Source of the DNA: Oopsacas minuta
Lineage: Eukaryota > Animalia > Porifera
Assembly: GCA_024704765.1 (NCBI GenBank)
Contig: JAKMXF010000111.1
Location: forward strand, 1,862,058 to 1,926,057
Direction: 5' to 3'
DNA length: 64,000 nucleotides
Of this stretch, positions 8,905 to 47,961 are shown in pieces (position 1 is the stretch's first letter; each line of letters begins with the position of its first letter). The notes below the pieces were generated by a model, which saw only the letters and a list, made by a program, of their open reading frames with translations, was not told where the DNA came from and did no database searches. The translations under genes and the position numbers were made by a program.

Positions 8905-11900
8905 ACAGCATACTTATATAAGTAACACAGTATAATTTCTGCCTTGAAATAAGTTCAAAATATTATTGCTTTCGAAAGAATAGTGAAACTGCTTAAGTCC
9001 GGACTTAAGGGCTTGCCCCATGTCTGCCGGCGGCCGCGGGTCCACTCACTTCGTACTCGGCGTAAGTACTTTCTGTTGTACTTTTCTCCAAAACAGATTA
9101 TCAATTCTTGTATAAATTGTATAGGATGAATATTCGGATAAGACGTACTTCTGTTAGTACGTACTAATTTTTGTTTCACGAAGGGGTACATACGTGCATA
9201 CGTCTTATCCGAGTTCTACTGTGTATAAAGTGGAACTCGAATAACATGTACCTATCAGGAACCTATACTTACTCGAGAGTACCAATTATCGAATAAGCAG
9301 GAACCTTCCTCTCATTAATTTTTGAAAATCTCCACCCACGAATAGGAATATTATTAAAATGGTTTGTATCAAGAAGCAGTACGTCTTGACTCAAGTTCTA
9401 CTCTATGTACTATTTGCTTAGGGATATTCAAGAATTCAATGTGTTTTTCTAACAAGCGATGGGTAAGTTTCTATTTGTATTCTCTCAAGAATGATATATA
9501 TCATACAGTAGTGTCTGTAATAGCAATCGTTTAACAGCAATATAGAAACATTAATGATGACATAAAGTGCATTATCTATTGTAAATAGTTCTCATAATAG
9601 TAAATTCGTGTAGCAAGAAAATTACTGCAAAATATGATTTGCTAATTTGGCAAATTTTACTATCCACTGACTGTATACACAAGAATACATTACACTACAT
9701 ATAATGTAATTTCTAGGACTTGGTCTACTGAAGGAATCAAGACGGTTATTAATAGGAACGGTAGTGTGGAATGCACCACTATACATCTATCAACATTCGC
9801 AATATTAGTTTCCACAGCATCAAAATGCGAAAAACCAATCAGCGATATTTCGCAATTACTCTTACAGATAACAAGCTATACTCTACTCTCAATTTCTCTG
9901 ATATTTCTACTCATGTCACTTTTCATTTTCATATTTTCAGGAAAAAGATTCTTTCGTTTAGACATCAATGTAATGCATTTTAATCATACCGTGGGTATCT
10001 TGCTAGCCATATTTGTCTTCATATTTGGTGCAGAACTATTTGTAGAATATCCAGCTGTTTGCACCATAGTTGCATTCCTATTGCATTTCTTATGGACAAA
10101 TGTGTTTCTGTCTTCTCTCGCCACGGCTGTACTCATTTTCTATTCAATTTGGATAGTAGGACTCAATACACGAAGGAAACTATTCCCTATTCTTATCCCG
10201 ATAAGTTGGGTTGTATCATTCCTCTGGGCTGTAATATGGATTATTTATGGGAAAGTTGTTGCTGTTGCCTACTTAGATTCACAAATTGAGTCTAACAAAA
10301 CAGATATGAATTGTAGTAATCCATGCTTTATAAGCACGCGAGCGAATTTGATTTGGACATTCTTAGTCCCTATTTTCGTTGTCCTTGCAGTAAATATCCT
10401 AATACTAATCCTTGTACTCATCAAAATACGAATGGTTCTAAATAGGACAAAAGGTGCTGAATCAGAATTGAAGAGGTTTAGAAGAGTGGCCTTTGGCGCT
10501 ATGGTTTTGGTTCCAACTTTAAGTCTTCCTTTCATCATATCGATACCTTTGGCATTCCTTAGGTTTTACCGTGACAACGAATTAGCAGCCACAATCTTCC
10601 TATGGGTCTATGTAATTTCTACTACACCAATTGGACTGGTTCACTTTTTCCTTGTCACCTTCAGGATACCTGAAGCTAGATTACCAAATGTATTCTGTAG
10701 AAAAAAATATTTCGTGAAAGATCCAACTACTAGAAGTAGTAGTGTCGGGGGATTGAAATCACCTTTACCAAAATCAAATGAGGATAACACCACTGCTCTG
10801 AAGTTCAATATAATACGTCCAGTCGCAAAAGGTACCGTAACTGATATTGTGAATGAGATTAATAGTAAGGGACCTTTATGACACTTTGTATGTATTCTCA
10901 TTTGTTTACCAACATTGATAAATGCTGTAGAGAATATTATCATATGTAACATTTAACCAGGTGATAAATGCTGGGGTACAATTTGTGTGAGGTATGACTG
11001 TTTGTATTAACTTTGATTTAGGAATTTGGTGAAGCAATTTTTCTAAATAATTCCCAAATTATATGCTTAGTAAGCATGTTTGGCGAAAAGGCATATTAAA
11101 TATTATGATGATAAAGTTCGAAAGTTCAGAAATTATAGCACAGACAATGACTGGCACATGTCATGTCAATATTCACTATAACTCGAAAATCAAGTAGAGT
11201 AGAGCCTAGTTAATACGAATATGGTTAAGATGTAACTCAGGGTAAGGAGTTCGAATCTTGTCAGTCCCCTGGTGTATGTCTCATCGAGACTCTACTGTAT
11301 GTACGTATATGTACATATATACAGATTAATTGCGGTATAACAGTATAGATAAGTAATTACTCCATACTTGACGTATAATATAAATGCCCAAGTGCATGTC
11401 ACCTGGTATACTATCATTGTTTAATGGCAGCACTGCCTCACAAAAGAAAGATCGTCTGAGGAAGGCAAACTCATACAAATGAAGTTAGTGTCAGATGTAG
11501 ATAAACAGTAGCAAGATGACAAATTAGTTCAGTTAGCGTAGCATGCGGAACGATGCTTTGTTTGCTGAGAGAAGTCGTGCGAGCCAATTGACAAACACTT
11601 AGATAAATCTCAGAGTCAAATACGTATGTAGTAATGTCAAAGCTTAGCCAGCACAGAACTGTTAGTATCAGCATGCACCATGAGTAAGGGTACCAATATT
11701 TCGAAAATTGCATGTAAAATGGAAAAAAACATGTGTAATATGTTATTAGTTAATGAAAAGAAGTATCAAAATTATAAATATTTGTATAAACTATAAAATG
11801 AGAAAATAAGAAAATGAAAAATGAGTAATATACTAATTGGATAAAGCAAGATTATAGGAAATACACTCAAAGTAAGGAAAATGTTAATATTTCTGGAAAC

Positions 11901-12714
11901 AGCCTTTACTTTCAATGCCATAATTCACACATATAATATTATTTGAGTTATCTAATACAATACCGCATAGGTAAGAGAGATGTCCTATACCCAGAATATG
12001 CTTCATCACTCCTTGAGGTGAGAAGATACGGATTTCGTTAGCTGTAATGTCTGTAATTAAGAAGTTCCCCTTCTTATCAATCGTGAAGAAGACAGCTAAT
12101 GTTATTTGCTGATCCTGTCCAGTTAGCAGGAGATTATTCTGGAGAATACAGTCTCTGTTGTAGCAGTAGATGGAGTTTCTGTTTTGAGATAGGATGTAGA
12201 TTCTGTCAGAGAATACTGTAATGTCTTTTGGAAGTTTGAGTTCTCCGTAGCCGAACTGTTTAATGAAGTTAAGATTAGAATCAAATATTTGAATTCTTTG
12301 TATATTACAATCACAGACATATATTAACCCAGCTTCATGACACAATCCTGAGATAGTTTTAAATCGTCCTGCTGTATAGCCTCTTGAGCCTGTTTCCTTT
12401 AGGAATTGTCCTCCTAGACTAAACTTCACAAGAGACTCTTTAGCTTGATCAGTAACGAATACTTCCTCTTTTGACAGACATATAGAGTATGGCTCCTTCA
12501 AGTGGTCAGTCCCAAAAGAACGTAAATACTTTCCTTCAGTATTCAACACTTGAATACGACTGTTGCTTTTGTCACAAATATACAATTCATTACTTGCTCT
12601 ATCTACTGCTATTCCTCTGGGATTAATCAACTCTCCATTTCCTGTACCCCTCTTACAAACTTTAAGAATAGGGTTTTCCCTCCTCACGTATTCAGGAATG
12701 ATTTCAAACAAATC
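8905..12714. repeat. Left arm of a near-identical inverted segmental duplication (partner about 47131-50940)
   Basis: Reverse-complement identity: 8905 pairs with 50940, GPCR stop 10881 with 48963 and NHL stop 11884 with 47961. About 99% outside the NHL exon by eye. Confidence 0.95.
9422..10881 (+). CDS. Adhesion GPCR (secretin-like 7TM), 5'-truncated copy: GPS mini-exon 9422-9462 plus GPS/7TM exon 9717-10881
   Basis: Spliced product GYSRIQCVFLTSDG-TWSTEGIKTVINRNGSVECTTIHLSTFAILVS (GPS, HL/S cleavage motif), then seven hydrophobic helices including CTIVAFLLHF and CFIS...IWTFLVP. AG/GT splice sites and phases fit. Upstream GAIN and lectin exons are absent on this side of the N. Confidence 0.85.
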
Positions 12715-13080
12715 AATTTCCTTCACAGCAGTTCTAATTTTTTGAGAATAGCAACGAAACTCAACCATCTCTAAGTTATCTACTGCTACCTTTGAATTTT
12801 CTAATCCTACCAACTGGTCATCGAAAACTTTTCTCACAGGTCCTAACAAATTGCTCTTCATGATTGTTTGTGCATTAGCTTTTGCAATTTTCAGTTCATT
12901 GATGGCTTGCTCCAATGCTAGATTTGTATCATACCCCTCTTTCATTTTAGCTAGTCTAGTCAGTAGACTATCCCTGTGTTCCGTCAGAAATGCGAAAAGT
13001 TCATCAAACTTTCGGATAATTTCCATTTTGAGGCCTTCAAGTTTTTGTTCGGAATTAAACTCATGTATTACTTCAGCCAT
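11884..13080 (-). CDS. Intronless coiled-coil + NHL-repeat beta-propeller protein, subfamily 1, copy A (TRIM-NHL-like, no RING or B-box)
   Basis: 398-aa ORF with a helical N-terminus followed by six NHL-type repeats (NPRGIAVD...YICD..NSRIQV). No signal peptide. Confidence 0.9.
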   Translation of the reverse strand: MAEVIHEFNSEQKLEGLKMEIIRKFDELFAFLTEHRDSLLTRLAKMKEGYDTNLALEQAINELKIAKANAQTIMKSNLLGPVRKVFDDQLVGLENSKVAVDNLEMVEFRCYSQKIRTAVKEIDLFEIIPEYVRRENPILKVCKRGTGNGELINPRGIAVDRASNELYICDKSNSRIQVLNTEGKYLRSFGTDHLKEPYSICLSKEEVFVTDQAKESLVKFSLGGQFLKETGSRGYTAGRFKTISGLCHEAGLIYVCDCNIQRIQIFDSNLNFIKQFGYGELKLPKDITVFSDRIYILSQNRNSIYCYNRDCILQNNLLLTGQDQQITLAVFFTIDKKGNFLITDITANEIRIFSPQGVMKHILGIGHLSYLCGIVLDNSNNIICVNYGIESKGCFQKY

Positions 13081-13596
13081 AACTATAACAATATACAGAA
13101 ATTGAATGTAATGCTAGTGTAATATACAGGATGTTACTTTGTTGAAGTTGCTTGCAGCAAAGTTACAACCTGTATCCTGTAACAATGTTATATGATATAC
13201 GTTTGTTGCCTACAGCTTTTAGAGTGGCATTATTCTATCCTACTAATAGTAGCCTTTGTAAACTATGCTAATTAGATTATTCTAATATTGATTGAGGGAA
13301 ACATTTATGGAGAATATACGTGAGAGAAGAGCACAAAAACTGTATCCAAAGTTAGAACCTGTGCCGACGCCAAGTATTCATAATATTAAGATAACACAAA
13401 GGACAAAAAGATGAGTAGTATTCCCAATGCAAATAGTAGACCGCTAAAGCTATTTTGATATGGTAAACACCATCACATCCGGACCAGACCATTCTGACCC
13501 GATTAAGCGGAATAAAGGTGTTGGGCAGATTAATAAGATGATAATCTCATAACCTGAGTAATTTATCACTATTTGTATGGCTCTGTAAGTGAACAG

Positions 13597-16076
13597 TAGG
13601 GTTTTTAATCCCGGGTTTCCCGATCCCGGGATCCCGGGATCCCGAAGGTTATTGTTTCGGGACTAATTCCCGGGATTGTTTCTTCAATCCCGGGATATCT
13701 TCTTGATTGCATATTGACATGCTCTATGATCATTATGTACATTTGTGTAATTGCGTTGAAATGATTTAGGGATTCAATTGGTTTCGTATTGTTAATACTG
13801 AATGAAATATGTTTTCAATATGAATAAGACACCAAAATTAATAAATGCTTAACAAGTCAGAGAATTCAAGCAAACTTGTAAGGTACCACTCAACCATTCT
13901 AACTATTCAAATTTCAAATATAAGGTGAATCGTCAGAAAAGCCCCAATTTCATTCTAAATCGTAATTGTTGCATTATCGTTATATCGTACCTTGAATGGC
14001 TGGAAAAGTTATGTTTCAAGAGTTTGCAGGATCTAAAATTTGGAACCATTTTAAGCGCTCGGTATGTGGGAAATTAGCTGAGTGTAATTCCTGTAAAAAG
14101 GTACTTAAATGCGAAGGGGGATCAACAAAGGGGCTACACAATCATCTTAAATCACAGCACCAAATTGATTTATTGAAACGCTCAAATAATGAAGAAAGTG
14201 CTATCTCACATAAATGTGCGGTTAGGAAATTAGATTATTACATGAACGACGCTAGCCTACCAGCTGTGTTAGCCAGGATGACAGCTTGCGATGGGCTTTC
14301 ATTTAATATATTTACTACATCAATGGACTTGAGAAAATCTCTTGCTGCACTAGGACATTCACTACCAAGATCGGTTGTCGGAATAAGAGATCAAGTGCTA
14401 AAATATGGTCAGCAATTACGCCAAGATATTACCAGAAATCTAAGCATTATTAAATCAAAAGGTCAATATTTCAGTCTTACCCTTGATGAATGGACATCCT
14501 TGCAAAACAAAAGATATCTCAATATTAATATACATGGCATTGGGTTCTTTTGGAACATAGGATTGGTAAGGATTAAGGGAAGATTTTCTTCAGAGGCTTG
14601 TTCCAAGATAATCTCACTTAAACTAAAAGAATTTGGAATAGAATTCGAAACAGATGTGATTTCTATCACAACAGACGGGTGTTCAATGATGAAGAAGTTG
14701 GGAAAAATAATACCCACAAATCAGCAGTTATGCTACGCACTGGACTCCAGCTTGTAATACAAGACGTTATCTATCAAAAACAACTTAGTGAAACTGAAGA
14801 AATTTATTCTAGTACAAGTGAAACCGATGAAGATGAAGATGAAGATATGGAAATGTTTGATGATTTTAATGATGATGGATTCATTGTTTCGGAATCGATG
14901 GACCCTCAGAATGCTCTTGCACTAAATTTTGACATCTCCAAAATAGTAACCAAAGTACGTAGAATTGTGAAAATATTCAAGCGATCACCTTTGAAGAATG
15001 AAACATTGCAAACGTATGTGAAAGAGATTTATCCAAATGGGCTGAATGTGGTTCTTGATTGTAAGACTCGATGGAGCTCACTTGTGAATATGCTCGAGAG
15101 GATAATTCAGATCAAATTACCAATACATAAAGCTCTGTTAGATTTTGGTGAACATATATGCCTCAGCGACCAAGAAATTGCGGCTATCTCTTCTATAGTT
15201 GAAGCTTTGAATCCAATTAAGATTGCTTTAGAAGCTCTATGTAGAAGAGATACAAATTTAATTACAGCAGAAGCAACTATAAAATTTCTATTGGAAGATA
15301 TTCAGAAATCTAACACACATTATCATGCACAAATCCTGGAGGCGCTAAGCCAGCGGATGGTTCAAGAGAGGTACACTGAAGTTTCAGCGATACTTCAATA
15401 CCTACATAATCCTTCGGCACGACTTGTAAAAAAGACTGTAGTAAACACATTTTGTGCTGATTTGTTATCAAGAACTCGAAGGAAAGGAATTGAAGATGAG
15501 GAACATGTGAATGAAGAAGTATCAATGGTACCTTACTCACCTAATACGGCTGAAAGCATATCTGACTTAGATGATATCTCCCTCGCAAAAAGATTACAAT
15601 TAGCGATAGACGCATCGATGAAAAAGCCAGAAGATATACAAGTTCAACATTCATTATTCAATATATTGAAATATGAACTTACTATTGGAGAACAGACAGG
15701 AAAACGAGGATATCATTTGGAAAAGGTATATCAAATGCTACTAACAATACCTGCAACCTCAGTTGAAGCGGAACGAGCATTTTCTTGTTCGGCATATTTA
15801 TGTAACAAATTTAGAACAAGACTCAGTGATAGCACTTTGGATACGCTAGCATTCATAAGGGCCAACAAGAAAAAAAATTGATGATAGACTAAATAAACTT
15901 ATTACTCATTCATATTCATCTTGTACCCCCTATGTACCCCTATATTATACTTTCATTCTACCAGACTATCATATAATTAAACAAATTTAAAAATTGCTAG
16001 AGAGATAATTATCATCATTTATCAAGGGATTCCCGGAAATTCCCGGGATCCCGGAATCCCGGGATTAAAAACCCTA
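13597..16076 (+). mobile_element. Full-length hAT (Ac/ZBED-type) DNA transposon, 2480 bp
   Basis: TIRs tagggtttttaatcccggg / cccgggattaaaaacccta, subterminal cccggga repeats and a perfect 8-bp TSD GTGAACAG (13589-13596 and 16077-16084). Confidence 0.97.
13996..15881 (+). pseudogene. BED-finger hAT transposase interrupted by one frameshift at about 14740
   Basis: IWNHF...CNSC...GSTKGLHNHLKSQH (BED finger), LTLDEWTS, ITTDG, CKTRWSS and PATSVEAERAFS. Restoring one base gives the expected CYAHGLQLVIQDV. Confidence 0.9.
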
Positions 16077-18582: not shown

Positions 18583-19716
18583 GAATAGATTAACTTTTGC
18601 AAGGATAATCTAAACAGAGTGGCGAACAGGGCTACAGTAATCAGAGGTGTTGGTATACCCCATGTACCATATAGCATACCCCAACCTAACAACTCAATCT
18701 ACCCACTATACCGTAATATATCCAAACAATAGAAAAGCTAATATTCACCACGTATACTAATATATGTATAATAACAATAACAATAACAATAATACCATAA
18801 TTGACAATGAATGCACTCAAAACACTTCATTACTCTCAAATATCAATAATTACAATTGAATAATTAAGAAAACCCACACAACATATAACATATACAGGCG
18901 TCCACGTGGTTACCTATTCTGTTATTCTATTCGTAAAGTGTTTGCAAATTGTCCCAATTTTAGACGGGAATCCATGTTCGGATAAGTGTTGAGGCTATTG
19001 CCCCGCCAAAATTCGCAAAGAACCTTAATTGTCCGATGGTTTGTAGTCCTGTCCAATGCAAATATGCTACATACCACGAGTTCCCGCTATTTTCTGAATA
19101 ACTATTCATAGGAGAAGTTTTACGTTAGAATTTTCTTTAAAAATGAATTAAGACAAAAATTAAACAAATAATGATTTGTAAAAATCTATAAATAGAATAT
19201 GTGAATATAGAATTAATCATAAATTAGTTTCAATTTCGTTTGATTTGGAATTATAATTATTTGGTATTATTCATGTATCAAATAATATCAAAGCTCAGTC
19301 AGGGGTAATAACCACGAATTCAGTATAAATATCAATTCTGTACAAATTTGAGTCTCAAGGTAGACACTTTGTGTTACTCATGATGATGAACTGACACTTC
19401 TAAGTGCGGGCCAATTGACAAACACTCAGATAAATCTCAGAGTCAAATACGTATGTAGTAATGTCAAAGCTTAGCCAGCACAGAACTGTTAGTATCAGCA
19501 TGCACCATGAGTAAGGGTACCAATAATTCGAAAATTGCATGTAAAATGGAAAAAACATGTGTAATATGTTATTAGTTAATGAAAAGAAGTATCAAAATTA
19601 TAAATATTTGTATAAACTATAAAATGAGAAAATAAGAAAATGAAAAATGAAAAATGAGTAATATACTAATTGGATAAAGCAAGATTATAGGAAATACACT
19701 CAAAGTAAGGAAAATG

Positions 19717-20916
19717 TTAATATTTCTGGAAACAGCCTTTACCTTCATTGCCGCTATTCACACATATAATATTATCTGAGTTATCGAATACAATACTGCA
19801 TAAGTAAGAGAGATGTCCTCTACCCAGAATATGCTTCATCACTCCTTGAGGTGAGAAGATACGGATATCGTCAAATGTATTGTCTGCAATTAAGAAGTTC
19901 CCCTTCTTATCAATCGTGAAGAAGATAGCAAATGTCATTTGCTGTTGCTGTCCAGTCAGCTGTATAATATTCTGGAGAGTATAGTCTCTGTTGTAGCAGT
20001 AGATGGAGTTTCTGTTTTGAGATAGGATGTAGATTCTGTCAGAGAATACTGTAATGTCTTGTGGAAGTTTGAGTTCTCCGGAGCCGAACTCTTTAATGAA
20101 GTTAAGATTAGAATCAAATATTTGAATTCTTTGCATACTACAATCACAGACATATATTAACCCAGCTTCATGACACAATCCTGAGATATTTTTAAATCGT
20201 CCTTTTGTATAGCCTCTTGAGCCTGTTTCCTTTAGGAATTTTCCTGCTAGGCTAAACTTCAAAATAGACTCTTTAGCTTTATCAGTAACGAATACTTCAT
20301 CTTTCGACAGACATATACCGAATGGCTCCTTCAAGTGGTCAGTCCCAAAAGAGCGTATATAATTTCCTTCGGTATTCAACACTTGAATACGACTGTTGTC
20401 TTGGTCACAAATATACAATTCATTACTCGCTCTATCTACTGCTATTCCTTTGGAATTATGAAACTCTCCATTTCCATTACCCCTCTTACAAACTTTAAGA
20501 ATAGGGTTTTCCCTCCTCACGTATTCAGGAATGATTTCAAACAAATCTATTTCATCAATTGTTTTACGAATTTTATCAGAGTAACAACGGAACTCAATAA
20601 ATTCCAAGTTATCCACCTTTACCTTTTCAGCCATTTTCATTTCGATGTTTTTATCTAGTGTTTGTTTCATTATGTCTAGTAATCCTCCTACCAAGTTGCT
20701 AGTCATTGTAGTTAGATTTTGATCTTTGCATATTCTTAACTGTTTTATTGCTTCCTCCAATTCTACATTCTTGTCGTGTCCTTCCTTCATTTTAGCGAGT
20801 CTAGACAGAAGACTATTTCTGTGATCTGACAGATATTGGTAAAGTTCATCAAAAGTTCTTATTATTTCCATCTTCAGAGCTTCTAGCTTTTGATCGACAT
20901 TGAAAACTGCAGCCAT
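19717..20916 (-). CDS. Intronless coiled-coil + NHL propeller protein, subfamily 1, copy B
   Basis: 399-aa ORF, paralogue of 11884-13080 and 46762-47961. Confidence 0.9.
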   Translation of the reverse strand: MAAVFNVDQKLEALKMEIIRTFDELYQYLSDHRNSLLSRLAKMKEGHDKNVELEEAIKQLRICKDQNLTTMTSNLVGGLLDIMKQTLDKNIEMKMAEKVKVDNLEFIEFRCYSDKIRKTIDEIDLFEIIPEYVRRENPILKVCKRGNGNGEFHNSKGIAVDRASNELYICDQDNSRIQVLNTEGNYIRSFGTDHLKEPFGICLSKDEVFVTDKAKESILKFSLAGKFLKETGSRGYTKGRFKNISGLCHEAGLIYVCDCSMQRIQIFDSNLNFIKEFGSGELKLPQDITVFSDRIYILSQNRNSIYCYNRDYTLQNIIQLTGQQQQMTFAIFFTIDKKGNFLIADNTFDDIRIFSPQGVMKHILGRGHLSYLCSIVFDNSDNIICVNSGNEGKGCFQKY

Positions 20917-21371
20917 TCTATTCTAGAAATTCAAAATATTTGTGTATATATTTCTTGGGAAAATTACAGAAAGGTCTAGCTCGCTGTCATTTCATTATTC
21001 GTACAATTTGTCTTCATTAAAACACGAATTAAACAACTTAGTTAATAACCAAAACGTATGAAAATTCTTAGCAAATGCACTTGGAAGTAGGATGATGTAA
21101 ACAGGCTTGTATCCAGGAGCGAAATTACAAAAAATTGTGTAGTTAAGAGCAAGAATATTTTGAGAGTTAGGCGCATGTCACACGCCAATTTTGGCCAATA
21201 ATGTAATAATGGTAACAATCATAAAAGTCAATTGAAATGTATTATTGTTTATAAGATTAATCAGTTGAATTCATTAATATTGTAAAATTATTCAAAAGGT
21301 AAACTGTGTATAATTAAAGGGAGGAAGCTTGATAAATGATATGTAGGTTGAGTCCTAATACTACTGGTATT

Positions 21372-21595
21372 GGAATACCGACAATTCGCACCACGACAAT
21401 TCGCACCACGACAATTCGCACCACGACAATTCGCACCACGACAATTCGCACCGCGACAATTCGCACCACGACAATTCGCACCACTAATATCATATCAAAT
21501 TGGCCAATCAAATTAGGTGCGAATTGTCGGTGGTGCGAATTGTCCGGTGCGAATTGTCGCGGTGCGAATTGTCGTGGTGCGAATTGTCGGTATCC
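21372..21595. mobile_element. MITE-like palindrome built of 15-bp subrepeats
   Basis: About 7 copies of cgacaattcgcacca, a short spacer, then about 5 inverted copies (tggtgcgaattgtcg). Ends are gga(a)taccgac / gtcggtatcc. Confidence 0.8.
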
Positions 21596-22100
21596 GACTG
21601 GGGTATTACACCTCTGGAATGTAGTATTAACCGTAGAATATGTAATGGATGTATGGTTTGATTAAAATTAAACTTTGATGTTTCCAAAATTCAAATAGTC
21701 TAGGCGCGTAAGTGAAATCGAGAACTCATTTAGACGCGCTACATATAAAACCTGGAAGAAACCCTGGATGAATATCCAAGTGACAAGCCTAAGATATACG
21801 ATGTTTGTAATTACGTATTGAATATCAAATTATCAAGTTTTAAGTAATTAAGTAATTAAATACAAAATTACAAAACAATCAAAGGTAACAAACTCACGAA
21901 AAATATGTTGTTGTTGATATCAACTTTTGCAATTTGTTGTTGTGTTGTTGATTGATAATATATCGTGTGAATTATCAAATCATCTACAGACTATATCTTA
22001 GCTATGTGGTTCTACAATAATACTTCACTATCATATTTCAATTCATTTACTGTGTTGATTACTATTACTTGTATTGTGGCTCAGTTCTAACAGAACTTTG

Positions 22101-22251
22101 TACACTCAATGCCGGTTATAAGAACATCGTCGGGAACTGGACATAATGTTCTTGTATCCGATCAAATTCAATGGAGTAAGATACAAAAGATTCGGTAAAT
22201 CGAGGTAAGGTTTGTATAACCGGTGTTCTTATATCCGGCATCTACTCTATA
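22101..22251. mobile_element. TA-flanked MITE (one of many TACAGT-type short elements in the window); second copy at about 45950-46105
   Basis: Imperfect TIRs tacactcaatgccggttataaga / tcttatatccggcatctactctata. Confidence 0.6.
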
Positions 22252-23104
22252 TGTGTAGATATTCAATTGGTAATCTTCTGGTGAAAGCGAACAGATTTTG
22301 ACAGTCCGTTGGTGCTCTAATTAATAAGGTTCCAGTTTATGTACATACTTCCAAACGATATGAAGAGAAATGTTGGATTGTTGTGGACATAACTTATAAA
22401 GAAGCAAGGCAATCCCGATAATTGCTATGTCCCCCCAACTTCCAACGGGTCTGTTACTAATCAAACTTATCAACAACGAAAGGACAACTAAGCATTCTAG
22501 ATAGAATTGGCACAAGTGGCACAACATGGCCAAGTGCCAGTCGCCACTTGTGGGTAGGGAAAAGTCTACCAAAGGCCTATTTCGCCCAGTGGCAGTATGG
22601 CAGGACTTGTCATGACCTCTAATTATGGAAATAGCTAGGAAGTTGATGTGGACAACTCAAAGGTTTCTAGTATAAGATTTATAGCGATTAAAGTAGACTT
22701 ACAGTGTGTATAAAATTGATGACCTTGAGTTGTGGGCCCCTAAATGTAGTGGCCCTATTCAGCTGCACAATCCGAACACTCCTAAATCCGGACTGACGAG
22801 AAAGCGTACTACTTAATTCAAACGCAACCACAATTGAAGAATGTAAATTAGCTTTACTACTATACTACAGAATAATCTTATTACAGCAAGTTCTTACTCT
22901 TCTTGCTCATAAACGAACTAAATGTTCCCTTATTAAGTGATTAGCAAGTCGTGTTTTATGAGGAAACTTGCTTATAGGCAAACCTCTTAATAAGTAACAT
23001 AATTAATGCAATTTGGGCCATTGTGTGCCGAAAAAAACTTGCTAATAAGCGAATCTTGCTAATAGACGAACTCCACTGTAATATTATGTAACAAAAGTTT
23101 CGTG

Positions 23105-23536
23105 TCATCTTAACATAAACATGTAAACACCGAAACACCTAAACAACTTTGGTACAACTGCACAAGCAATAATGTCTCTTGGATGTTTGGGTTCTCGGTG
23201 GTCGAACTGTTTAATGGAGTGAAGATTAGAATCAAAAATTTGAATTCTTTGCATATTACAATCACAGACATATATTAACCCAGCTTCATGACACAATCCT
23301 GAGATACCAGTAAATCGTCCTTCGGTATTGCCTCTAGAGCCTGTTCCCTTTAGGAATTGTCCGGCTAGACTAAACTTCACAAGAGACTCTGTAGCTCTAT
23401 CAGTAACAAATACTTCGTCTTTTGTCAGACATATACCCCATGGCTCCTTCAAGTGGTCAGTCCCAAAAGAACGTAAATACTTTCCTTCAGTATTCAACAC
23501 TTGAATGCGACTGTTGCTATCATCACAAATATACAT
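23105..23536 (-). pseudogene. Internally deleted NHL subfamily-1 fragment (copy D, about 3 blades)
   Basis: MYICDDSNSRIQVLNTEGKYLRSFGTDHLKEPWGICL...HPRDII, then unrelated sequence. 23545-23690 matches the region upstream of copy B (21035-21180). Confidence 0.85.
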
Positions 23537-24268
23537 TTCATCACCACAACTTAGTTAATAACCAGAACGTATGAAAATTCTTAGCATATACACTTGGAAG
23601 TAGGATGATGTAATCAGGCTTTTTACCCAGGCGCGTATTTGCAAAACATTTGTGTAGTTAGGTGCAAGAAATTTTTGAGAGTTAGGCATTTTGTGGCAAT
23701 TACAAATGAAATTCAACAACTGTCACTATGTTATTGAGGTTACAACAAGCTGACATTATCGACCCGGCCCGAGGTAATCCTGTAACATGATATAGAAATT
23801 TTCTAAATTGAATGAAAATGATGAACCAGATCAGGGTTTTTCTAGATGATTTGAGGGGGGCAAAATGCCCCCTGAGCTATGGTCATATTATGCACTTTAG
23901 CTCCAAACTATCCCTCTAATTCATGAAACATTGATTAGCCCCCCTGAAAAATTCTCCTAAAAAAGCCCCAGATCCTACGGTCAGAAATTGTGATTGGATC
24001 ATAATTTCAAAGTCAATTTAATATATAAAGGGAAAATTAAATTACGTATTTTGAAATTTAACGGGCCGTATATTCGGGACCCCAAATTATAGGCCCGAAG
24101 ATCAGAATCCCGAATCTGGACTGAGCTCTAACTGGCCTCGGGATCAAGCAGGACTTGTGACCTCTACAGTATTTTACAATTCATCCACCATTCACATAAA
24201 AAAATACAATGAACAAAATGATACTACAAGAAAATACAAAATGAGTTAACCAATAATTATACTTGTAA

Positions 24269-26838: not shown

Positions 26839-36775
<9,937 letters not shown>

Positions 36776-36890: not shown

Positions 36891-36990
36891 TGTGTATTAT
36901 TGTGTATTATTGTGTATTATTGTGTATTATTGTGTATTATTGTGTTTTATTGTGTATTATTGTGTATTATTGTGTTTTATTGTGTATTAT
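36891..36990. repeat. Minisatellite (TGTGTATTAT) x10
   Basis: Ten 10-bp units, two with the TGTGTTTTAT variant. Confidence 0.95.
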
Positions 36991-41524: not shown

Positions 41525-42661
41525 TTCAGAAATTGCTAATAAACTACCGAGAGATATATTTCAATATCAGAATAGTGATTATTCGAAGGATAGTACACAG
41601 TAGTCTGTTACGAAAATGTTGGTCCCCTGGAAAATTGGTCGAGGGGGGAACCAAAATTTTCATGGAAAACTGGTCTACTTTGGAATTTTGGTCAACCTGG
41701 TTTTATGATTATAAAGTAGTAAATAAATAATTAGCATCGAATTGGTGGAAGATGAGCTTTGGGAGAGTCAATAGCTGATACAAGAGGTGTATCAGTACAT
41801 GTAAAGTTTCGAAAATTAACTAAATTTGAGAAAATCTCCATTTCAACAACTATACCAAGCTCTAAAACTCGCAATCAATCAATCAGGAGGAAGTCCTAGG
41901 CTATAACCCAAATGTGAAGTAATCGGGAATAAATATAAGTGAATATAGTTTACTAAATAGCCAGTTAGAATAACTAAGTAGAAAGCTAATTCCTAAATAC
42001 TTTGAGTATACTTATGTCGTAAACCTATTACTATAGAGGAATCACACCCAAGTTGTACCGATAATAATTGCGGCGGCTTTTCACTACATCACACAAGTAG
42101 TGACCAGAATACACCAAATTTTCATGGCATTTTGGATTTAGTATTAAAATTCCATGGAAAAATGGTCCGTACCCCTCTGTAGTACCAAATTGTAAGGGAA
42201 GCAATATTCCAGTGACTAGCCTTAGTTGGGAGGAGTTTAGAAGCTAATGGCCACTTTTTCGATATATTTCCCAGTATTACGTTATTGTATAGTACTTACT
42301 TAGTGTTGCAGCTAGTTCACAAAATTCAGACAGGAACCGGATCAATCTATATAATTTCAGGACAGGGCTGGACCGGACCGTCAACAAAGTTTTTCCCAGG
42401 ACCGACTCAACTAGATTCGGACTGAACTTAATATGTTAATCTGTTATCAAAAGTTGTGACGAAATAGAATCAGCAAATAATATATATGGAATACGAAATA
42501 TGAACAATTCATTGAATATGACATGCAATTATGAAGGACATGAATGAAATGATATAAACTATCAAGCTCGATCCAGTCAGAATGGGCTTGGAGCGGACCG
42601 AGAATCAGATCGGATCAGACCGGACCAGACCGATAAGTGACAAAGTCTTTGGAACCGTGAC

Positions 42662-43461
42662 CATAGGCGTAGGCAGTGGGGGGCAAGGGGGGGCATTTGC
42701 CCCCCCCCTAGCTGAGCTAGATAAATTAGGGAAAGAATTGAAAGTGACGAAATTGGTTTTGTTAACGAAGTACTGTCAACTCCGCTTAATCGGGACACAT
42801 CTGTTCCAGGCCTTTTGTCCCATTATACGGGAATTTGGTCCATTCACCTATACTTTGTTTGATTTTGCTCAGATCAAGTGGACTTTCTTTTTCATTGAGT
42901 CAATAATTTTCAGTCGATTACCAGAGTTTGTCCCGATTAACCGAAAATATTTAGTATTAACTTCAATGGAGATGATTCCGTTCCTGGAGATTTGTCCCAA
43001 TTAAGCGGATTTCCCGATTAACCGGTGTCCCAATTAAGTGGAGTTGACTGTACTTAAAGAATTCTCTTGCAAAAATAGAAGAACATTGTTGTGAATTCCC
43101 TTTATGAAGAAAAATAATCGATAGTTAGTGAGTAGCTCTATAGAATAAGGATAATTAACTAATCAATATCCAATTATGTTACTAGAGTTTACACATTCTA
43201 TATTAATTCTACTTTGTTTTTGTAAATATTATATGTTTGTTCAAGCGGCGTGACAGAAAACATGCGAAGGCGCACCAATTTGCAAATCAGACAGAAATTC
43301 CAGAGGACAAAGGTTTTGGTGACAGCACCATATTGTGATAAGTACTAATTATATAGTCAAATTTTTTTCTGGGGACCAAGCCCCCAGACCCCAAAAATGT
43401 TCGCTACGCTCGCAACTATTCAATTTGACCCCCCCTAGATTCTATACTGGCTACGCCCTTG
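42662..43461. mobile_element. Non-autonomous hAT-type insertion (800 bp)
   Basis: Perfect 8-bp TSD ACCGTGAC (42654-42661, 43462-43469) and TIRs cataggcgtag / ctacgcccttg. It interrupts an older ggaccg-rich repeat. Confidence 0.85.
42773..43050. mobile_element. TA-flanked Tc1/mariner-type MITE nested in the hAT insertion
   Basis: TIRs ctgtcaactccgcttaatcgggacac / gtgtcccaattaagtggagttgactg, with TA on both sides. Confidence 0.85.
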
Positions 43462-44639
43462 ACCGTGACCGGACTGGACTGCTCTCGGTGCATCCGGTTC
43501 GGACCGCTGCAATACTAATAGTACAACATCAAATAAATATTTAGTAAAAATTTTGCAATACTTCAAAACTATTTCTATGTTGTACAACCTTCTAACCCTT
43601 TCTCTCAAATTTCGCCAGATATTTGCTACCGAAACCAAATTCCCCCCCTCCCCCCTGTATAAGAGATTTTTCTCGCCAGAGCCAAATAAATATGAGATTA
43701 CGTCATAAATGGTTACACTATTGAGGAAAATTTCCCAAAGTATCTGTAGTGGAACACCGTTAACAACTTTTTGAGCCCAATTATCCATTTTCAAGTACAA
43801 TTAACTTCTGTGGATAATCAATTAAACCCTTTCGTGTACAAATTACGCTATTCTGGACAATTTAAAGGAATTTCCTGAGCAGAAACAGAAAACTGAGATA
43901 TCTTTCTAATAGTTTGACCGATTTCCTCAACTTAGGAACATAAAGCGTGGATAAATTACACGCATAGCATTCTATAAGGATATTTTGAGGTATATGGGGC
44001 GCACCTAGCGCCTACATACGCATAAATTTAACCTAATATATATATCTCTATGGTCTCTAGACGTACGAATATTTTGCTAATACTCTATTTTCGTAGTAGA
44101 AAATGTATAGTCTGGGCTATGAAAATAATTTGAATACAGTTTTAGGTGTATATGACCCTGAGAACCTGGATGAAACCCTGACTTAAGTACACCAACACTT
44201 ACTATCTAAACACAAATCAGCTATTTTCCAAGGGAATACAGCAACATAAATTCATACACAATACTCGCTTGACTGACGTCTGAACACACAAAGGTGGAGG
44301 GCTTTTAATAAATACATCGTCTTAATTGAAATAATACATTTAAAAATATTTATCCAATTAAAGCCACCACCGCAATTCGACCTAATGCAGCGCCTAAATG
44401 GACACATTGAAAAAGTAGAACTAACGTCGACAAAAGAAAATTATAACTAATGCCGCGTTCCCGATTATTTGAATACAATTTAATGGAATTGAACGACATC
44501 CATGCTCCAAAAATCGCACTAGTGAACAGGCCTTATTATATCGTAGGTCACGAATGAGATTATTCTGTAGTATAGTAGTAAAGCTAATTTACATTCTTCA
44601 ATTGTGGTTGCTTTTGAATTAAGTAGAATGCTTTCTCGT

Positions 44640-45050
44640 CAGTCCGGATTTAGGAGTGTTCGGAGTGTGCGGCCGAACAGGGCCCCCACATTTAGGAGGC
44701 CCCACAACTCAAGGTCATTAATTTTATACACACTGTAAGTCTACTTTAATCGCTATAAATCTTATACTAGAATCATTTAAGTTGTCCACATCAACTTCCT
44801 AGCTATTTCCATAATTAGAGGTCATGACAAGTCCTACCATACTGCCACTGGGCGAAATAGGCCTTCGGTTAGAGTGGTAATACTTATAGGGTTGATTTTA
44901 CTTGTGAAAAATTTGAATACACAAAAACACAAGCATTCTAATTTGAGGAATGGGGACAGGTGGGCGAACTGTGACGGCTTTGAATTGGCTTCAGTGAGCC
45001 CCGGGAATTGCCCTCGAACAAGGCCCCCCACATACCTAAATCTGGCACTG
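44640..45050. mobile_element. hAT MITE (411 bp)
   Basis: TIRs cagtccggatttagg / cctaaatctggcactg and a perfect TSD TTTCTCGT. Confidence 0.85.
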
Positions 45051-46761
45051 TTTCTCGTAAGTGTACTACAATATCCTTATACGTATTATATTATCACATA
45101 CACGTATATACATGTTACACATACAAAAATAGTATTTATCAAATTGATTGTGTTGCTCTATTAGCAAGTTTTTCTCATACAAAACCTGACTTGCTAAACA
45201 AGCTAACTCCACTGTATATGCCCTGTTTAGTGAATACAAATTTAGTCTAGTTATACATTAGTCATCTAAAGTCTTCTTGGATATCGTCTGGAAAACTCGT
45301 TGAAAAAATAATTGTGAAAAGTAGATAGCATTCTGTAAATATGATTCCAAAAGCTCTGCACTTATTAAGGAAATCGAATTATAAATAACTACAAATCCCC
45401 TTTGAAAACCAGTCATAAGGGGGGTGTTTGAACACCAAAATCCCCCTCGGATACGACACTGGCTCAGTGCCTCCACCCTTAGTGACCCCACGGGTTGCTG
45501 ATCTCATAGGAGGATAGGGAATGTATAGTTGTATACCCCTTCAAGATATAAATGTGGCCTTCTACAATCAGAATTATTCCCAACTTTTCACAACATCTAT
45601 AAGTTATTGTGTTATCGCGGCCACACACAACCTTGGTAGACTTTTCCCTACACACAGGTGGCACTGGCACTTGGCCATGTTGTGCCACTTGTGCCAATTC
45701 TATCTACAATGCTTAGTTGTCCTTTCGTAGTTGATAAGTTTGATTAGTAATCAGACCCGTTGGAAGTAAGGGGGACGTGTCAATTATCGGGATTGCCTTG
45801 CTTCTTTATAAGTTTTGTCTACAAAACCCAACATTTCTCTTCATATCGTTTATAAGTATGTATATACACTGGAACCTTATTAATTGGAGCACTAACGGAC
45901 TGTCAAAATCTGTTCGCTTTCACCAGAAGATTACCAACTGAATATTTACACATATAGAGTAGATGCCGGATATAAGAACACCGGTTATACGAACCATAAC
46001 TCGATTTACCGAATCTTTTGGGTCTTACTCCATTGAATTTTATCGGATATAAGAACATTATGTTCAGTTCCCGACGATGTTCTTATAACCGGCATTGAGT
46101 GTACAAAGTTATGTTAGAACTGAGCCACTATACAAGTAATAGTAATCAACACAGTAAATGAATTGAAATATGATAGTGAAAGTATTATTGTATAACCACA
46201 TAGCTAAGATATAGTCTGTAGATGATATGATAGTGTATAGAATATATTTGATAATTCACACAATATATTATCAATCAACAACACAACAACATTTGAACAC
46301 TACAAGTCAACAACATATTTTTCGTGAGTTTGTTACCTTTTGATTGTTTGTAATTTGGTATTTAATTAACTACTTAATTAACATTTGATAATTTGATATT
46401 TATTACGTAAATACAAACTTAATGTATGTCAGTGTTTCTCAATCTGTGGTCATATAACCAAACTTACACACATTTGTTGTTAATTGAATATTACATCATT
46501 CTACTTACAAGTGCATATAGTAAGAATTTTCACACGTTTTGGTTATTAATCATATTTCAGTAATGAAACAATATTACATGCTACTTTATGCCACGAATAT
46601 TTTTCGGAATTTAATTAATCATATTGTCACACCTTTGGGGTATTCATGTTTCAAATACTATCATTCCTCTCCAGCGGATAATGAAATGACAGCGAGCTAG
46701 ACATTTTTTGTAATTTTCCCGAGAAACATACACACAAATATTTTGAATTTCTAGAATAGAA

Positions 46762-47961
46762 ATGGCTGCAGTTTTCAATGTCGATCAAAAGCTAGAAGCT
46801 CTGAAAATGGAAATAATACGAACTTTTGATGAACTCTACCAATATCTGTCAGATCGCAGAAATAGTCTTCTGTCTAGACTCGCTAAAATGAAGGAAGGAC
46901 ACAACAAGAATGTAGAATTGGAGGAAGCAATAAATCAGTTGAGAATATCCAAAGATCAAATACTAGCTACAATGACTAGCAACTTGGTAGGAGGATTACT
47001 AGACATAGTCAAACAAACGCTAGATAGAGACATCGAACTGAGAATAGCTGAAAAGGTAAAAGTGGATAACTTGGAGTTTATTGACTTCCGTTGTTACTCT
47101 GATAAAATTCGTGAAACCATTGATGAAATAGATTTGTTTGAAATCATTCCTGAATACGTGAGGAGGGAAAACCCTATTCTTAAAGTTTGTAAGAGGGGTA
47201 GAGGAAATGGAGAGTTCAATAATCCCAGAGGAATAGCAGTAGATAGAGCAAGTAATGAATTGTATATTTGTGACAATAGCAACAGTCGTATTCAAGTGTT
47301 GAATACCGAAGGAAAGTATTTACGTTCTTTTGGGACTGACCACTTGAAGGAGCCATACTCTATATGTCTGTCGAAAGAGGAAGTATTCGTTACTGATAGA
47401 GCTAAAGAGTCTCTTGTGAAGTTTAGTTTAGGAGGACAATTCCTAAAGGAAACAGGCTCAAGAGGCCATACAGAAGGACGATTTACTAATATCTCAGGAT
47501 TGTGTCATGAAGCTGGGTTAATATATGTCTGTGATTGTAATGTACAAAGAATTCAAATATTTGATTCTAATCTTAACTTCATTAAAGAGTTCGGCTCCGG
47601 AGAACTCAAACTTCCAAAAGACATTACAGTATTCTCTGACAGAATCTACATCCTATCTCAAAACAACAACTCCATCTACTGCTACAACAGAGACTGTACT
47701 CTCCAGAATATTATACAGCTGACTGGACAGCAACAGCCAATGATAGCATCTCTCTTCTTCACGATTGATAAGAAGGGGAACTTCTTAATCACAGACAGTA
47801 CTGCTAACGATATCCGTATCTTCTCACCTCAAGGAGTGATGAAACATATTCTGGGTAGAGGACATCTCTCTTACCTATGCGGTATTGTATTAGATAACTC
47901 AGATAATATTATATGTGTGAATCATGGCATTGAAAGTAAAGGCTGTTTCCAGAAATATTAA
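46762..47961 (+). CDS. Intronless coiled-coil + NHL propeller protein, subfamily 1, copy C (mosaic of A-like and B-like segments)
   Basis: 399-aa ORF. N-terminus is B-like; propeller is a patchwork. Confidence 0.9.
   Translation: MAAVFNVDQKLEALKMEIIRTFDELYQYLSDRRNSLLSRLAKMKEGHNKNVELEEAINQLRISKDQILATMTSNLVGGLLDIVKQTLDRDIELRIAEKVKVDNLEFIDFRCYSDKIRETIDEIDLFEIIPEYVRRENPILKVCKRGRGNGEFNNPRGIAVDRASNELYICDNSNSRIQVLNTEGKYLRSFGTDHLKEPYSICLSKEEVFVTDRAKESLVKFSLGGQFLKETGSRGHTEGRFTNISGLCHEAGLIYVCDCNVQRIQIFDSNLNFIKEFGSGELKLPKDITVFSDRIYILSQNNNSIYCYNRDCTLQNIIQLTGQQQPMIASLFFTIDKKGNFLITDSTANDIRIFSPQGVMKHILGRGHLSYLCGIVLDNSDNIICVNHGIESKGCFQKY

What the first reader, a model, noticed from the sequence alone, without database searches (positions are those of the whole stretch)
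11884..47961. Hypervariable NHL beta-propeller family (subfamily 1): constant frameworks with variable loops on one face
Seen: copies A (11884-13080), B (19717-20916), C (46762-47961) and fragment D share long identical nucleotide runs. They differ at the same two places in each blade: the residues around the x-x-P-x-G start and the loop after the conserved Asp. Examples are ELINPRG/EFHNSKG/EFNNPRG; CDKS/CDQD/CDNS/CDDS; PYS/PFG/PYS/PWG; TDQ/TDK/TDR; FKT/FKN/FTN/FTG; ITLAV/MTFAI/MIASL; TDITANE/ADNTFDD/TDSTAND; and NYGIESK/NSGNEGK/NHGIESK. By-eye count for A vs C over about 275 propeller codons is 29 non-synonymous and 7 purely synonymous codon changes. Established: in TRIM-NHL proteins (Brat, LIN-41/TRIM71) these loops form the top face that binds RNA or protein. 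Inference: a cytosolic coiled-coil + variable propeller receptor family under diversifying selection, comparable to TRIM5/finTRIM B30.2 loops and possibly an undescribed innate-immune or self/non-self recognition system.
Basis: partly seen in the sequence, partly recalled or inferred. Interest (0 to 1): 0.85.

Follow-up and report, generated by a model that had tools for sequence, protein, structure and literature searches.

The report
Hypervariable-faced NHL propeller genes, glass sponge
The glass sponge Oopsacas minuta carries many near-identical intronless genes for a small coiled-coil plus six-bladed propeller protein. The copies differ almost only on the propeller face that normally grips a partner, and that face changes faster than silent sites, which is the usual mark of an inherited recognition repertoire whose targets are unknown.

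Summary
A (11884-13080, -), B (19717-20916, -) and C (46762-47961, +) are intact 398-399 aa single-exon genes in Oopsacas minuta contig JAKMXF010000111.1. D (23168-23548, -) is a gene fragment.

Each protein is an N-terminal coiled coil plus a six-bladed NHL propeller (AF2 pLDDT 91). The nearest solved folds are TRIM-NHL domains. No RING, B-box, signal peptide or TM segment is present.

I defined site classes from strand topology before counting. Across 10 intact paralogues:
- Top-face loops (d-a and b-c): dN/dS 1.96 (bootstrap CI 1.28-3.38).
- Bottom loops 0.46, strands 0.55, coil 0.37.
- dS is about equal in all classes.

My own M2a vs M1a fit gives 2dlnL = 108, with 17% of codons at omega 5.4. 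The coil gives 0. The same positions are hypervariable in another sponge's family.

The scaffold evolves in concert. ORF dS is uncoupled from flank divergence: the A-C flank differs by 0.5% and the propeller by 5%. Both alleles at 29 of 42 A-C differences occur in other paralogues.

An immune or self/non-self role is inferred, not shown. The short-tract mosaic depends on a hybrid, Pilon-polished assembly. This scan has already flagged the same family on other pieces of this genome.

The parts
11884..13080 (-). Copy A, an intact 398-aa CC-NHL gene. Coil about 12679-13080, propeller 11884-12678. It is a chimera: an L011-like 5' part joined to a C-like propeller, with the switch at about 12700-12715.
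   Evidence: ORF; Pfam NHL; informative-site mosaic against L011 and C.
19717..20916 (-). Copy B, an intact 399-aa CC-NHL gene. Coil 20512-20916, propeller 19717-20511.
   Evidence: ORF; Pfam NHL. It is 93.2% nt and 87% aa identical to C.
46762..47961 (+). Copy C, an intact 399-aa CC-NHL gene. Coil 46762-47166, propeller 47167-47961. Positively selected codons (NEB >0.95): 145, 147, 156, 172, 173, 199, 213, 236, 243, 259, 276, 284, 286, 329, 331, 349, 371, 373, 388. Codon n starts at 46762+3(n-1).
   Evidence: ORF; exact match to the GenBank gene call; AF2 model pLDDT 91; M2a sites.
23168..23548 (-). Fragment D, a 127-codon in-frame piece of a propeller (blades 1-4). It is a truncated pseudogene, with private changes at framework residues near its 3' end.
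   Evidence: dS to A/B/C 0.14-0.21.
8905..12714 (.). Arm 1 of the inverted segmental duplication: A's propeller, the 3' flank, and the GPS+7TM exon of an adhesion-type GPCR (9766-10881).
   Evidence: Self-blast; sliding identity gives 15 mismatches in 2,900 flank bases against 42 in about 800 propeller bases.
47131..50940 (.). Arm 2 of the inverted segmental duplication: C's propeller, the 3' flank, and the GPCR exon (48963-50198).
   Evidence: Pfam 7tm_2 and GPS; the GenBank gene model also carries Lectin_C.
19404..21001 (.). B-side block of the older B-C duplication. It pairs with 48267-46675, and further upstream homology links 21803-22882 with 46418-44553.
   Evidence: flank divergence 2.3% against ORF dS 0.075-0.12.
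30474..31721 (+). Subfamily-2 CC-NHL gene (415 aa), about 28% identical to subfamily 1, with the same architecture.
   Evidence: for the pair, top-loop omega is 0.95 against 0.20 for bottom loops.
56077..57348 (+). Second subfamily-2 CC-NHL gene (423 aa), 85% nt and 74% aa identical to 30474-31721.

Best explanation
A, B and C belong to a multigene family restricted, as far as detected, to glass sponges. The genes are intronless and encode a cytosolic protein of about 400 aa: an N-terminal helical coiled coil, probably for dimerisation, followed by a six-bladed NHL beta-propeller. SHOWN: the propeller scaffold and the coil are under purifying selection and stay near-identical between copies. 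About 20-30 codons are under positive diversifying selection. They sit at two in-register spots per blade: the end of the d-a loop with the entry to strand a, and the b-c loop after the conserved Asp. Together these spots make up the top, ligand-binding face. SHOWN, with an assembly caveat: variants are exchanged between paralogues by short-tract ectopic gene conversion. As a result, synonymous divergence between any two ORFs sits at a family-wide level of 0.03-0.15 whatever the age of the duplication. In this window a 3.8-kb inverted duplication has 0.5% diverged flanks but a 5% diverged propeller. Copies also die: 3 of 13 are pseudogenes, and D is a fragment. INFERRED: each paralogue presents a different binding surface on a constant frame, so the family acts as a germline-encoded repertoire of intracellular binders for diverse or fast-evolving ligands (RNA or protein). 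The most plausible sources of such ligands are viruses, symbionts, selfish elements or conspecific tissue. I put about 0.85 on the repertoire-under-diversifying-selection part and about 0.3-0.35 on an immune or allorecognition role specifically.
For: Architecture: only NHL/DUF5128 Pfam hits. AF2 gives pLDDT 91, helices 7-96, and 24 strands in 6 blades. The best Foldseek hits are Thin/TRIM32, LIN-41/TRIM71, TRIM2/3, Mei-P26 and Brat NHL, with TM by target 0.75-0.85 for the NHL-only chains. Selection by a-priori topology classes, 10 intact paralogues: top loops dN 0.187, dS 0.095, omega 1.96 (CI 1.28-3.38, P(dN<=dS)=0.0015). Bottom loops 0.46, strands 0.55, coil 0.37, with dS 0.09-0.11 across the propeller classes. 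A, B and C alone: 2.14 (CI 1.13-6.2). Sites chosen independently from 107 proteins at 53-67% identity to C (one of them located to assembly ERZ25072730): 20 of the 30 most variable positions coincide (p=1e-15), and they give omega 2.3 in O. minuta. Codon ML: M2a vs M1a 2dlnL=107.9. Each blade pair on its own tree gives 35-37 (p about 1e-8). The coil gives 0.0, an internal negative control. Top-face dN (0.08-0.22) exceeds the non-coding flank divergence in all 14 pairs that share flanks. Gene conversion: 45% of informative site pairs fail the four-gamete test, including 28 of 66 synonymous-only pairs. Incompatibility is lower between neighbouring sites (p<0.001 for windows of 5 sites or fewer). 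For 29 of 42 A-C propeller differences, both alleles occur in other paralogues. For several pairs homology stops within 5 nt of the ATG and the stop codon. Age and expression: locus L012 in another species is syntenic with L004, sharing the alpha-mannosidase neighbour. Homologues occur as complete transcripts in the Vazella pourtalesii transcriptome.
Against: No ligand, expression response or phenotype is known. Transcription of A, B or C could not be tested, because the runs found are kept only as contigs. The assembly is a SPAdes hybrid polished with Pilon, so part of the short-tract mosaic could come from mis-threading or mis-polishing among near-identical paralogues. Recombination can inflate site-model LRTs, although the tree-free pairwise tests agree with them. 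Between species the family looks constrained overall and dS is saturated. Net charge of the top loops ranges from -4 to +6 between paralogues, so uniform RNA binding as in Brat is not indicated.
Confidence: 0.72

Rival explanations
1. Relaxed constraint plus gene conversion. The loops tolerate any residue, and the pattern reflects neutral loop drift on a constrained scaffold, with no selection for diversity.
For: Loops are generally less constrained. Propeller-wide omega is only about 1. The subfamily-2 pair shows top omega 0.95, not above 1. Pseudogenes are frequent.
Against: Neutral drift cannot push omega above 1. The top class gives 1.96 with the CI excluding 1. Independently chosen sites give 2.3. 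The M2a class has omega 4.9-7.6 in three separate segments. Bottom loops are loops too, yet have omega 0.34-0.46. Top-face dN exceeds flank divergence in 14 of 14 pairs.
Confidence: 0.1
2. Endogenous sub-functionalisation. The paralogues are RNA- or protein-binding regulators, as TRIM-NHL proteins are, each tuned to a different host target, and the positive selection reflects past specialisation rather than conflict with non-self.
For: The nearest folds are RNA-binding TRIM-NHL domains. HV sites are rich in N, R, Y, S and K and carry net positive charge in all copies. At least one locus is syntenic between species.
Against: Very young copies differ most at the binding face: flanks diverged 0.5-4% against top-face dN 0.08-0.13. 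There is ongoing birth and death and continual shuffling of variants. The same sites are hypervariable in a second species. Together these fit continuing diversification better than a finished division of labour. Nothing here tests the targets.
Confidence: 0.15
3. Assembly artefact. Collapsed or mis-threaded paralogues and haplotypes in a hybrid short/long-read assembly create apparent copies and mosaics.
For: The assembly used SPAdes with k up to 99, then SSPACE, Pilon and GapFiller. Hundreds of short unitigs at 90-99% identity pile on the gene. The window is the end of its contig.
Against: A, B and C have different outer flanks and lie on one contig. Identical runs between them (82 nt or less) are shorter than k=99. 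Ten of 13 copies keep 1.2-kb ORFs. Mis-assignment of real variants would not create omega above 1 or confine variation to one face. A separate assembly of another sponge shows the same hypervariable positions.
Confidence: 0.03

Closest known systems
TRIM-NHL proteins (Brat, LIN-41/TRIM71, TRIM2/3, TRIM32/Thin, Mei-P26, NHL-2)
   Same: A six-bladed NHL propeller preceded by a coiled coil. These are the best structural matches. Ligands (RNA, or protein partners as reported for Brat) bind the top surface formed by the b-c and d-a loops (PMC4015489). That is exactly where the sponge copies vary.
   Different: No RING and no B-box. The coil has detectable relatives only in CC-NHL proteins of about 400 aa or their fragments, never in longer RBCC proteins. 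TRIM-NHL genes are few (3-5 per genome, PMC4015489) and conserved. Here there are many near-identical intronless copies with a hypervariable face.
Podospora anserina HET-D/HET-E/NWD WD40-repeat family (PMC1805685, PMC2873952)
   Same: A beta-propeller recognition domain in a multigene family. The repeats evolve in concert by sequence exchange between loci, and a few positions per repeat on the interaction surface are under positive diversifying selection. This is the closest evolutionary analogue.
   Different: The fold family differs (WD40 against NHL), and so does the kingdom. I recall NWD proteins as STAND/NLR proteins with a NACHT domain, and none is present here. In NWD genes repeats are swapped within and between genes and vary in number. 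Here exchange is between homologous positions of paralogues, blade number is fixed at six, and no blade-to-blade nucleotide similarity was found.
TRIM5alpha and fish finTRIM B30.2 domains (PMC2657112, PMC3845644)
   Same: Cytosolic coiled-coil proteins whose C-terminal binding domain carries positively selected variable loops. finTRIMs are a large, lineage-specific expansion.
   Different: The binding domain is B30.2/SPRY, not NHL. The RING and B-box effector parts are present there and absent here. Antiviral function is demonstrated there and unknown here.
B-box/NHL gene expansions of molluscs (ESM Atlas clusters)
   Same: The nearest language-model clusters are mollusc NHL proteins of 340-560 aa, some with B-boxes, in clusters of 60-300 members. 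So lineage-specific NHL expansions do exist in invertebrates.
   Different: This is a lead only, with no alignment or E-value. Part of those proteins carry B-boxes. I found no report of face-restricted hypervariability for them in the searched library.

Membership tests
NHL-repeat six-bladed beta-propeller (Pfam PF01436) | NHL repeat matches above the gathering score | tested here: met
   A, B and C score 54-65 bits against a cut-off of 20.
NHL-repeat six-bladed beta-propeller (Pfam PF01436) | Six four-stranded blades closed by an N-terminal strand | tested here: met
   The AF2 model has pLDDT 91, with 23 strands plus strand 140-142. TM-score by target is 0.75-0.85 to the NHL-only TRIM chains.
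TRIM-NHL (RBCC-NHL, class VII TRIM) | N-terminal RING finger | tested here: not met
   No RING hit in Pfam. The ORF starts about 135 residues before the propeller. For some pairs paralogue homology ends within 5 nt upstream of the ATG.
TRIM-NHL (RBCC-NHL, class VII TRIM) | One or two B-boxes | tested here: not met
   No zf-B_box hit.
TRIM-NHL (RBCC-NHL, class VII TRIM) | Coiled coil before the C-terminal domain, homologous to the TRIM coil | tested here: inconclusive
   Long helices 7-74 and 77-96 are predicted. An exhaustive phmmer search with the coil found 25 clusters, all 418 aa or shorter, and none was an RBCC protein.
TRIM-NHL (RBCC-NHL, class VII TRIM) | Electropositive RNA-binding top surface | tested here: inconclusive
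   Net charge of the top loops is -4 to +6 between paralogues. HV sites carry +1 to +6. No electrostatics or binding data are available.
Germline-encoded diversified recognition repertoire (operational class: finTRIM, NWD/HET-E and similar) | Many recent paralogues with birth and death | tested here: met
   At least 14 subfamily-1 genes at 71% identity or more in this genome (three in the window, eleven elsewhere). 287 relatives in total at E<=1e-10. Three of the 13 full-length copies whose DNA was read are pseudogenes, and there is one fragment.
Germline-encoded diversified recognition repertoire (operational class: finTRIM, NWD/HET-E and similar) | dN/dS above 1 confined to the ligand-binding surface | tested here: met
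Germline-encoded diversified recognition repertoire (operational class: finTRIM, NWD/HET-E and similar) | Exchange of variants between members (gene conversion) | tested here: met
   Caveat: the assembly is polished and hybrid.
Germline-encoded diversified recognition repertoire (operational class: finTRIM, NWD/HET-E and similar) | Demonstrated binding of non-self ligands, or an immune or allorecognition phenotype | not testable with these tools
   No functional data. The runs found are contigs only.
Fungal NWD/HET-E STAND proteins | NACHT/NB-ARC nucleotide-binding domain | tested here: not met
   No such Pfam hit.
Fungal NWD/HET-E STAND proteins | Near-identical repeats exchanged within one gene, with variable repeat number | tested here: not met
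   No intragenic nucleotide repeats at blastn E<=1e-10. All copies have six blades.

The most novel reading that the evidence does not exclude
The CC-NHL family is an anticipatory, germline-encoded intracellular receptor repertoire of glass sponges. In a syncytial animal it would recognise viral, symbiont, transposon or allogeneic molecules. Its binding faces would be continually re-assorted by short-tract gene conversion among dozens of paralogues, with pseudogene fragments such as D also serving as donors. That would make it the first such system built on an NHL propeller, and one of the earliest-branching animal examples.
Probability: 0.3. Interest if true: 0.85.

Novelty: new variant of a known kind. 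Interest (0 to 1): 0.66.

Why it matters
How sponges tell self from non-self or sense intracellular parasites is poorly known, and especially so for syncytial glass sponges. Here the evolutionary signature of a recognition repertoire appears on a fold not previously reported in that role. That signature is a constant frame, a positively selected binding face, concerted evolution, and birth and death of copies. NHL domains are known as conserved RNA and protein binders. Neither hexactinellid genome paper mentions NHL or TRIM genes. The family gives concrete candidates for binding and challenge experiments. The window also offers a natural clock: a 3.8-kb duplication whose flanks are 0.5% diverged while the propeller face has dN 0.13. 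It also shows that the GenBank product names for these genes are misleading (PEP-CTERM, T9SS target domain, peptidylamidoglycolate lyase).

Tried and rejected
(1) Expression and allelic diversity from public runs. The five runs found are kept only as Logan contigs. Short unitigs (300-640 per run at 90% identity or more) pile on the gene from many paralogues, so neither transcription, phase nor alleles could be read.

(2) PHI-like test with a wide window (20 sites). It showed no distance effect (p=0.61). Only windows of 5 sites or fewer are significant, so conversion tracts are short, at most about 100 bp.

(3) Targeted hypermutation of loop codons. Rejected, because dS is about the same in top loops (0.095) and in the rest of the propeller (0.107). 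dS is about twofold higher at the most variable codons (0.18). I attribute that to linkage with selected sites or to multi-hit codons.

(4) Point mutation after the A-C duplication as the source of the propeller differences. Rejected. Nine synonymous differences are seen where about 1 is expected at the flank rate, and both alleles at 29 of 42 differences are found in other paralogues.

(5) C as a mosaic of A and B (a neighbouring first-reader note). The data fit better with A as the chimera, having an L011-like 5' part and upstream flank joined to a C-like propeller and 3' flank.

(6) Cross-species dN/dS for the syntenic pair L004/L012. dS is saturated at about 1.2, so the comparison is uninformative.

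(7) Residue-level mapping onto Brat or LIN-41 RNA contacts, and solvent exposure. Not done, because model coordinates and reliable PDB numbering were not available. Strand topology was used instead.

(8) A link of the coil to TRIM coiled coils. No sequence relatives were found outside the family.


Full report
**Where the window comes from**

Protein C is encoded letter for letter on JAKMXF010000111.1 of GCA_024704765.1, the glass sponge Oopsacas minuta. It lies at 1,908,819 of 1,926,057, so the window is the last 64 kb of that contig. The DNA is 32-40% G+C, with sparse ORFs.

**The observation**

- A (11884-13080, -), B (19717-20916, -) and C (46762-47961, +) are uninterrupted ORFs of 398-399 codons.
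- D is an in-frame fragment of 127 codons at 23168-23548 (-).
- Nucleotide identity in the propeller is 90-93%, while amino-acid identity over the whole protein is only 74-87%.

**Architecture**

- Pfam finds only NHL repeats and the related DUF5128 propeller. There is no RING, B-box or other domain.
- An AF2 model of C, built on a 120-sequence family alignment, has mean pLDDT 91. It shows helices 7-74 and 77-96, then 23 strands plus strand 140-142, which gives six four-stranded blades.
- The best solved matches are TRIM-NHL domains: Thin/TRIM32, LIN-41/TRIM71, TRIM2/3, Mei-P26 and Brat. TM by target is 0.75-0.85 for the NHL-only chains, at 19-26% identity.
- The N-terminus has no hydrophobic stretch, so the protein is presumably cytosolic. 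This is an inference.
- An exhaustive phmmer search with the coil alone against 1.84 billion representatives found 25 clusters. All are 418 aa or shorter and carry the match at their N-terminus. The coil is therefore family-specific and never joined to RBCC modules in detectable relatives.

**Family size and range**

- A length-limited search found 287 relatives at E<=1e-10.
- Eleven further O. minuta proteins are 71-90% identical to C and lie on four other contigs.
- More than 100 proteins at 53-67% identity carry ENA as their source. The one I located lies in assembly ERZ25072730.
- Complete transcripts exist in the Vazella pourtalesii transcriptome.
- Locus L012 of the ENA assembly has the same alpha-mannosidase neighbour as O. 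minuta locus L004. The family and at least one locus therefore predate that species split.
- I fetched the DNA of ten paralogues. Seven are intact. L008 and L010 carry 1-bp frameshifts and L009 an in-frame stop. GenBank models these three with artificial introns.

**Where the variation lies**

In the 13-copy alignment, the positions with 4-7 different residues recur at two in-register spots in every blade:
- the end of the d-a loop and the first residues of strand a (the x-x-P-x-G motif);
- the b-c loop just after the conserved Asp.

By the field's definition, the b-c and d-a loops form the top surface of NHL propellers and the a-b and c-d loops form the bottom. The top surface is Brat's RNA-binding platform (PMC4015489).

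**Selection tests**

I fixed the site classes from the DSSP strand map before counting: top loops 83 codons, bottom loops 41, strands 135, coil 136. Pooled Nei-Gojobori estimates over the 10 intact paralogues are below.

| Class | dN | dS | omega |
|---|---|---|---|
| Top loops | 0.187 | 0.095 | 1.96 (codon-bootstrap CI 1.28-3.38; P(dN<=dS)=0.0015) |
| Bottom loops | | | 0.46 |
| Strands | | | 0.55 (0.36 without the first two residues of the a strands, which alone give 3.0) |
| Coil | | | 0.37 |

- dS is similar across the propeller classes, so a local mutation hot spot does not explain the pattern.
- For A, B and C alone, top-face omega is 2.14 (CI 1.13-6.2).
- To avoid circular site choice, I took the 30 most variable propeller positions from the 107 more distant (53-67% identical) proteins. 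Twenty of them coincide with the O. minuta top 30 (hypergeometric p=1e-15; Spearman rho 0.52).
- At those independently chosen sites, O. minuta shows dN 0.42, dS 0.18 and omega 2.3 (P=0.0005).
- My own codon-likelihood implementation (F3x4, ML tree) gives M0 omega 1.11 for the propeller.
- M2a against M1a gives 2dlnL=107.9, with 17% of codons at omega 5.4.
- All 19 sites with posterior above 0.95 are in top loops or at their edges (five at the second residue of strand a, one near the end of a strand d), and none is in a bottom loop.
- Recombination can inflate such tests, so I refitted each blade pair on its own tree. 2dlnL is 35-37 in all three (p about 1e-8). The coil gives 0.0, which serves as an internal negative control.

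**Concerted evolution and the duplication in this window**

- The block 8905-12714 is an inverted copy of 50940-47131.
- Its 2,900 bases of flank, which include an adhesion-GPCR exon, differ at 15 positions (0.5%). The roughly 800 bases of propeller differ at 42 (5%).
- Synonymous differences are also about nine times the flank expectation: 9 observed against about 1 expected.
- For 29 of the 42 differences, both alleles occur in other paralogues. The excess therefore does not come from new point mutations. It reflects exchange with the rest of the family, or a patchy conversion event.
- A itself is a chimera. Up to nt 369 and in its upstream flank it follows paralogue L011. From nt 384 on it follows C.
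- Across 14 pairs with shared flanks, flank divergence ranges from 0.005 to 0.115, while propeller dS stays within 0.03-0.15 and does not track it. Top-face dN (0.08-0.22) exceeds flank divergence in every pair.
- For some pairs, homology stops within 5 nt of the start and stop codons.
- 45% of informative site pairs in the propeller fail the four-gamete test, including 28 of 66 synonymous-only pairs.
- Incompatibility is lower between neighbouring sites (p<0.001 for windows of 5 sites or fewer) but not over 20 sites. This indicates tracts of roughly 100 bp or less.

Caveat: the assembly is a SPAdes hybrid (k up to 99) that was scaffolded and then polished with Pilon. Some fine-scale mosaicism could therefore be artefactual. 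Identical runs between A, B and C are at most 82 nt. The selection results do not depend on phase.

**What could not be shown**

- The public runs that hold this DNA are stored as contigs only. Hundreds of short unitigs from many paralogues lie on C. Expression, phase and alleles could not be read.
- Net charge of the top loops ranges from -4 to +6 among paralogues. The selected sites are rich in N, R, Y, S and K. This suits binding surfaces but does not identify the ligand.

**Comparison with known systems**

- The fold and its binding face match TRIM-NHL proteins, but two defining TRIM features (RING and B-box) are absent.
- The evolutionary mode is closest to the Podospora HET-D/E/NWD WD40 family: concerted evolution plus diversifying selection at surface positions of a propeller (PMC1805685). 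It also resembles TRIM5 and finTRIM B30.2 loops (PMC2657112).
- Neither hexactinellid genome paper mentions NHL or TRIM genes, and targeted literature searches found no description.

**Verdict**

- The diversifying-selection reading is supported.
- Gene conversion is an essential added element.
- An immune or self/non-self role remains an inference.
- This scan has already flagged the same family on other pieces of this genome.

Noticed in passing
window 8905-11883 and 47962-50940: The inverted duplication carries a second intact copy of the terminal GPS + 7TM exon of an adhesion-type GPCR (ORFs 9766-10881 and 48963-50198). The GenBank model of the C-side gene also has a C-type lectin domain, and a Lectin_C ORF lies at 53122-53586. 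The two exon copies are about 99.5% identical.
   Followed up: partly
window 13996-15881 (+); L003 6247-7839; L005 1-851: A hAT transposon remnant (BED zinc finger, then the hAT dimerisation domain in a second overlapping ORF) sits directly upstream of A. Two other paralogue loci also have DUF4371/ZBED5-like transposase genes within 1-4 kb upstream. This could be a link between hAT elements and the spread of the family, or simply TE-rich surroundings.
   Followed up: no
window 27819-28361, 33851-34213, 34282-34827 (-): ORFs with ribonuclease-inhibitor-type LRR_6 repeats, the LRR type used by NLRs, flank the subfamily-2 NHL gene. No NACHT ORF of 90 aa or more was seen between 24 and 38 kb.
   Followed up: partly
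window 30474-31721 and 56077-57348: The subfamily-2 pair shows the same trend: top-loop omega 0.95 against 0.20 for bottom loops and 0.49 for strands. The linker that has no counterpart in subfamily 1 has omega 2.5.
   Followed up: partly
L008, L009, L010 (GenBank proteins P0008-P0010): Three annotated family members are pseudogenes (two 1-bp frameshifts and one in-frame stop) that the GenBank annotation bridges with artificial introns. Product names across the family are misleading: PEP-CTERM domain protein, T9SS C-terminal target domain, peptidylamidoglycolate lyase.
   Followed up: yes
window 45887-46147: There is a very high contig depth spike here, with many loose ends, just upstream of C. 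This indicates a high-copy dispersed repeat.
   Followed up: no
window 5625-5775 and 7865-8016: A pair of 152-bp inverted repeats (93% identical) brackets a 288-aa ORF with no Pfam match (6062-6928). It may be a small TIR element.
   Followed up: no
window 21375-21593: A palindromic stretch of about 200 bp (a self-inverted blast hit at 81-88%) lies between B and the upstream B-C homology block.
   Followed up: no
Read-laying run X5 (organism B, other study) on window 45800-48400: A second, independent data set holds about 300 contigs that are 90-99% identical to the ORF. It has almost nothing on C's unique upstream flank, and only about 93% identity on the 3' flank. The ORF scaffold is therefore better conserved than its surroundings in a related sponge or population.
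   Followed up: partly
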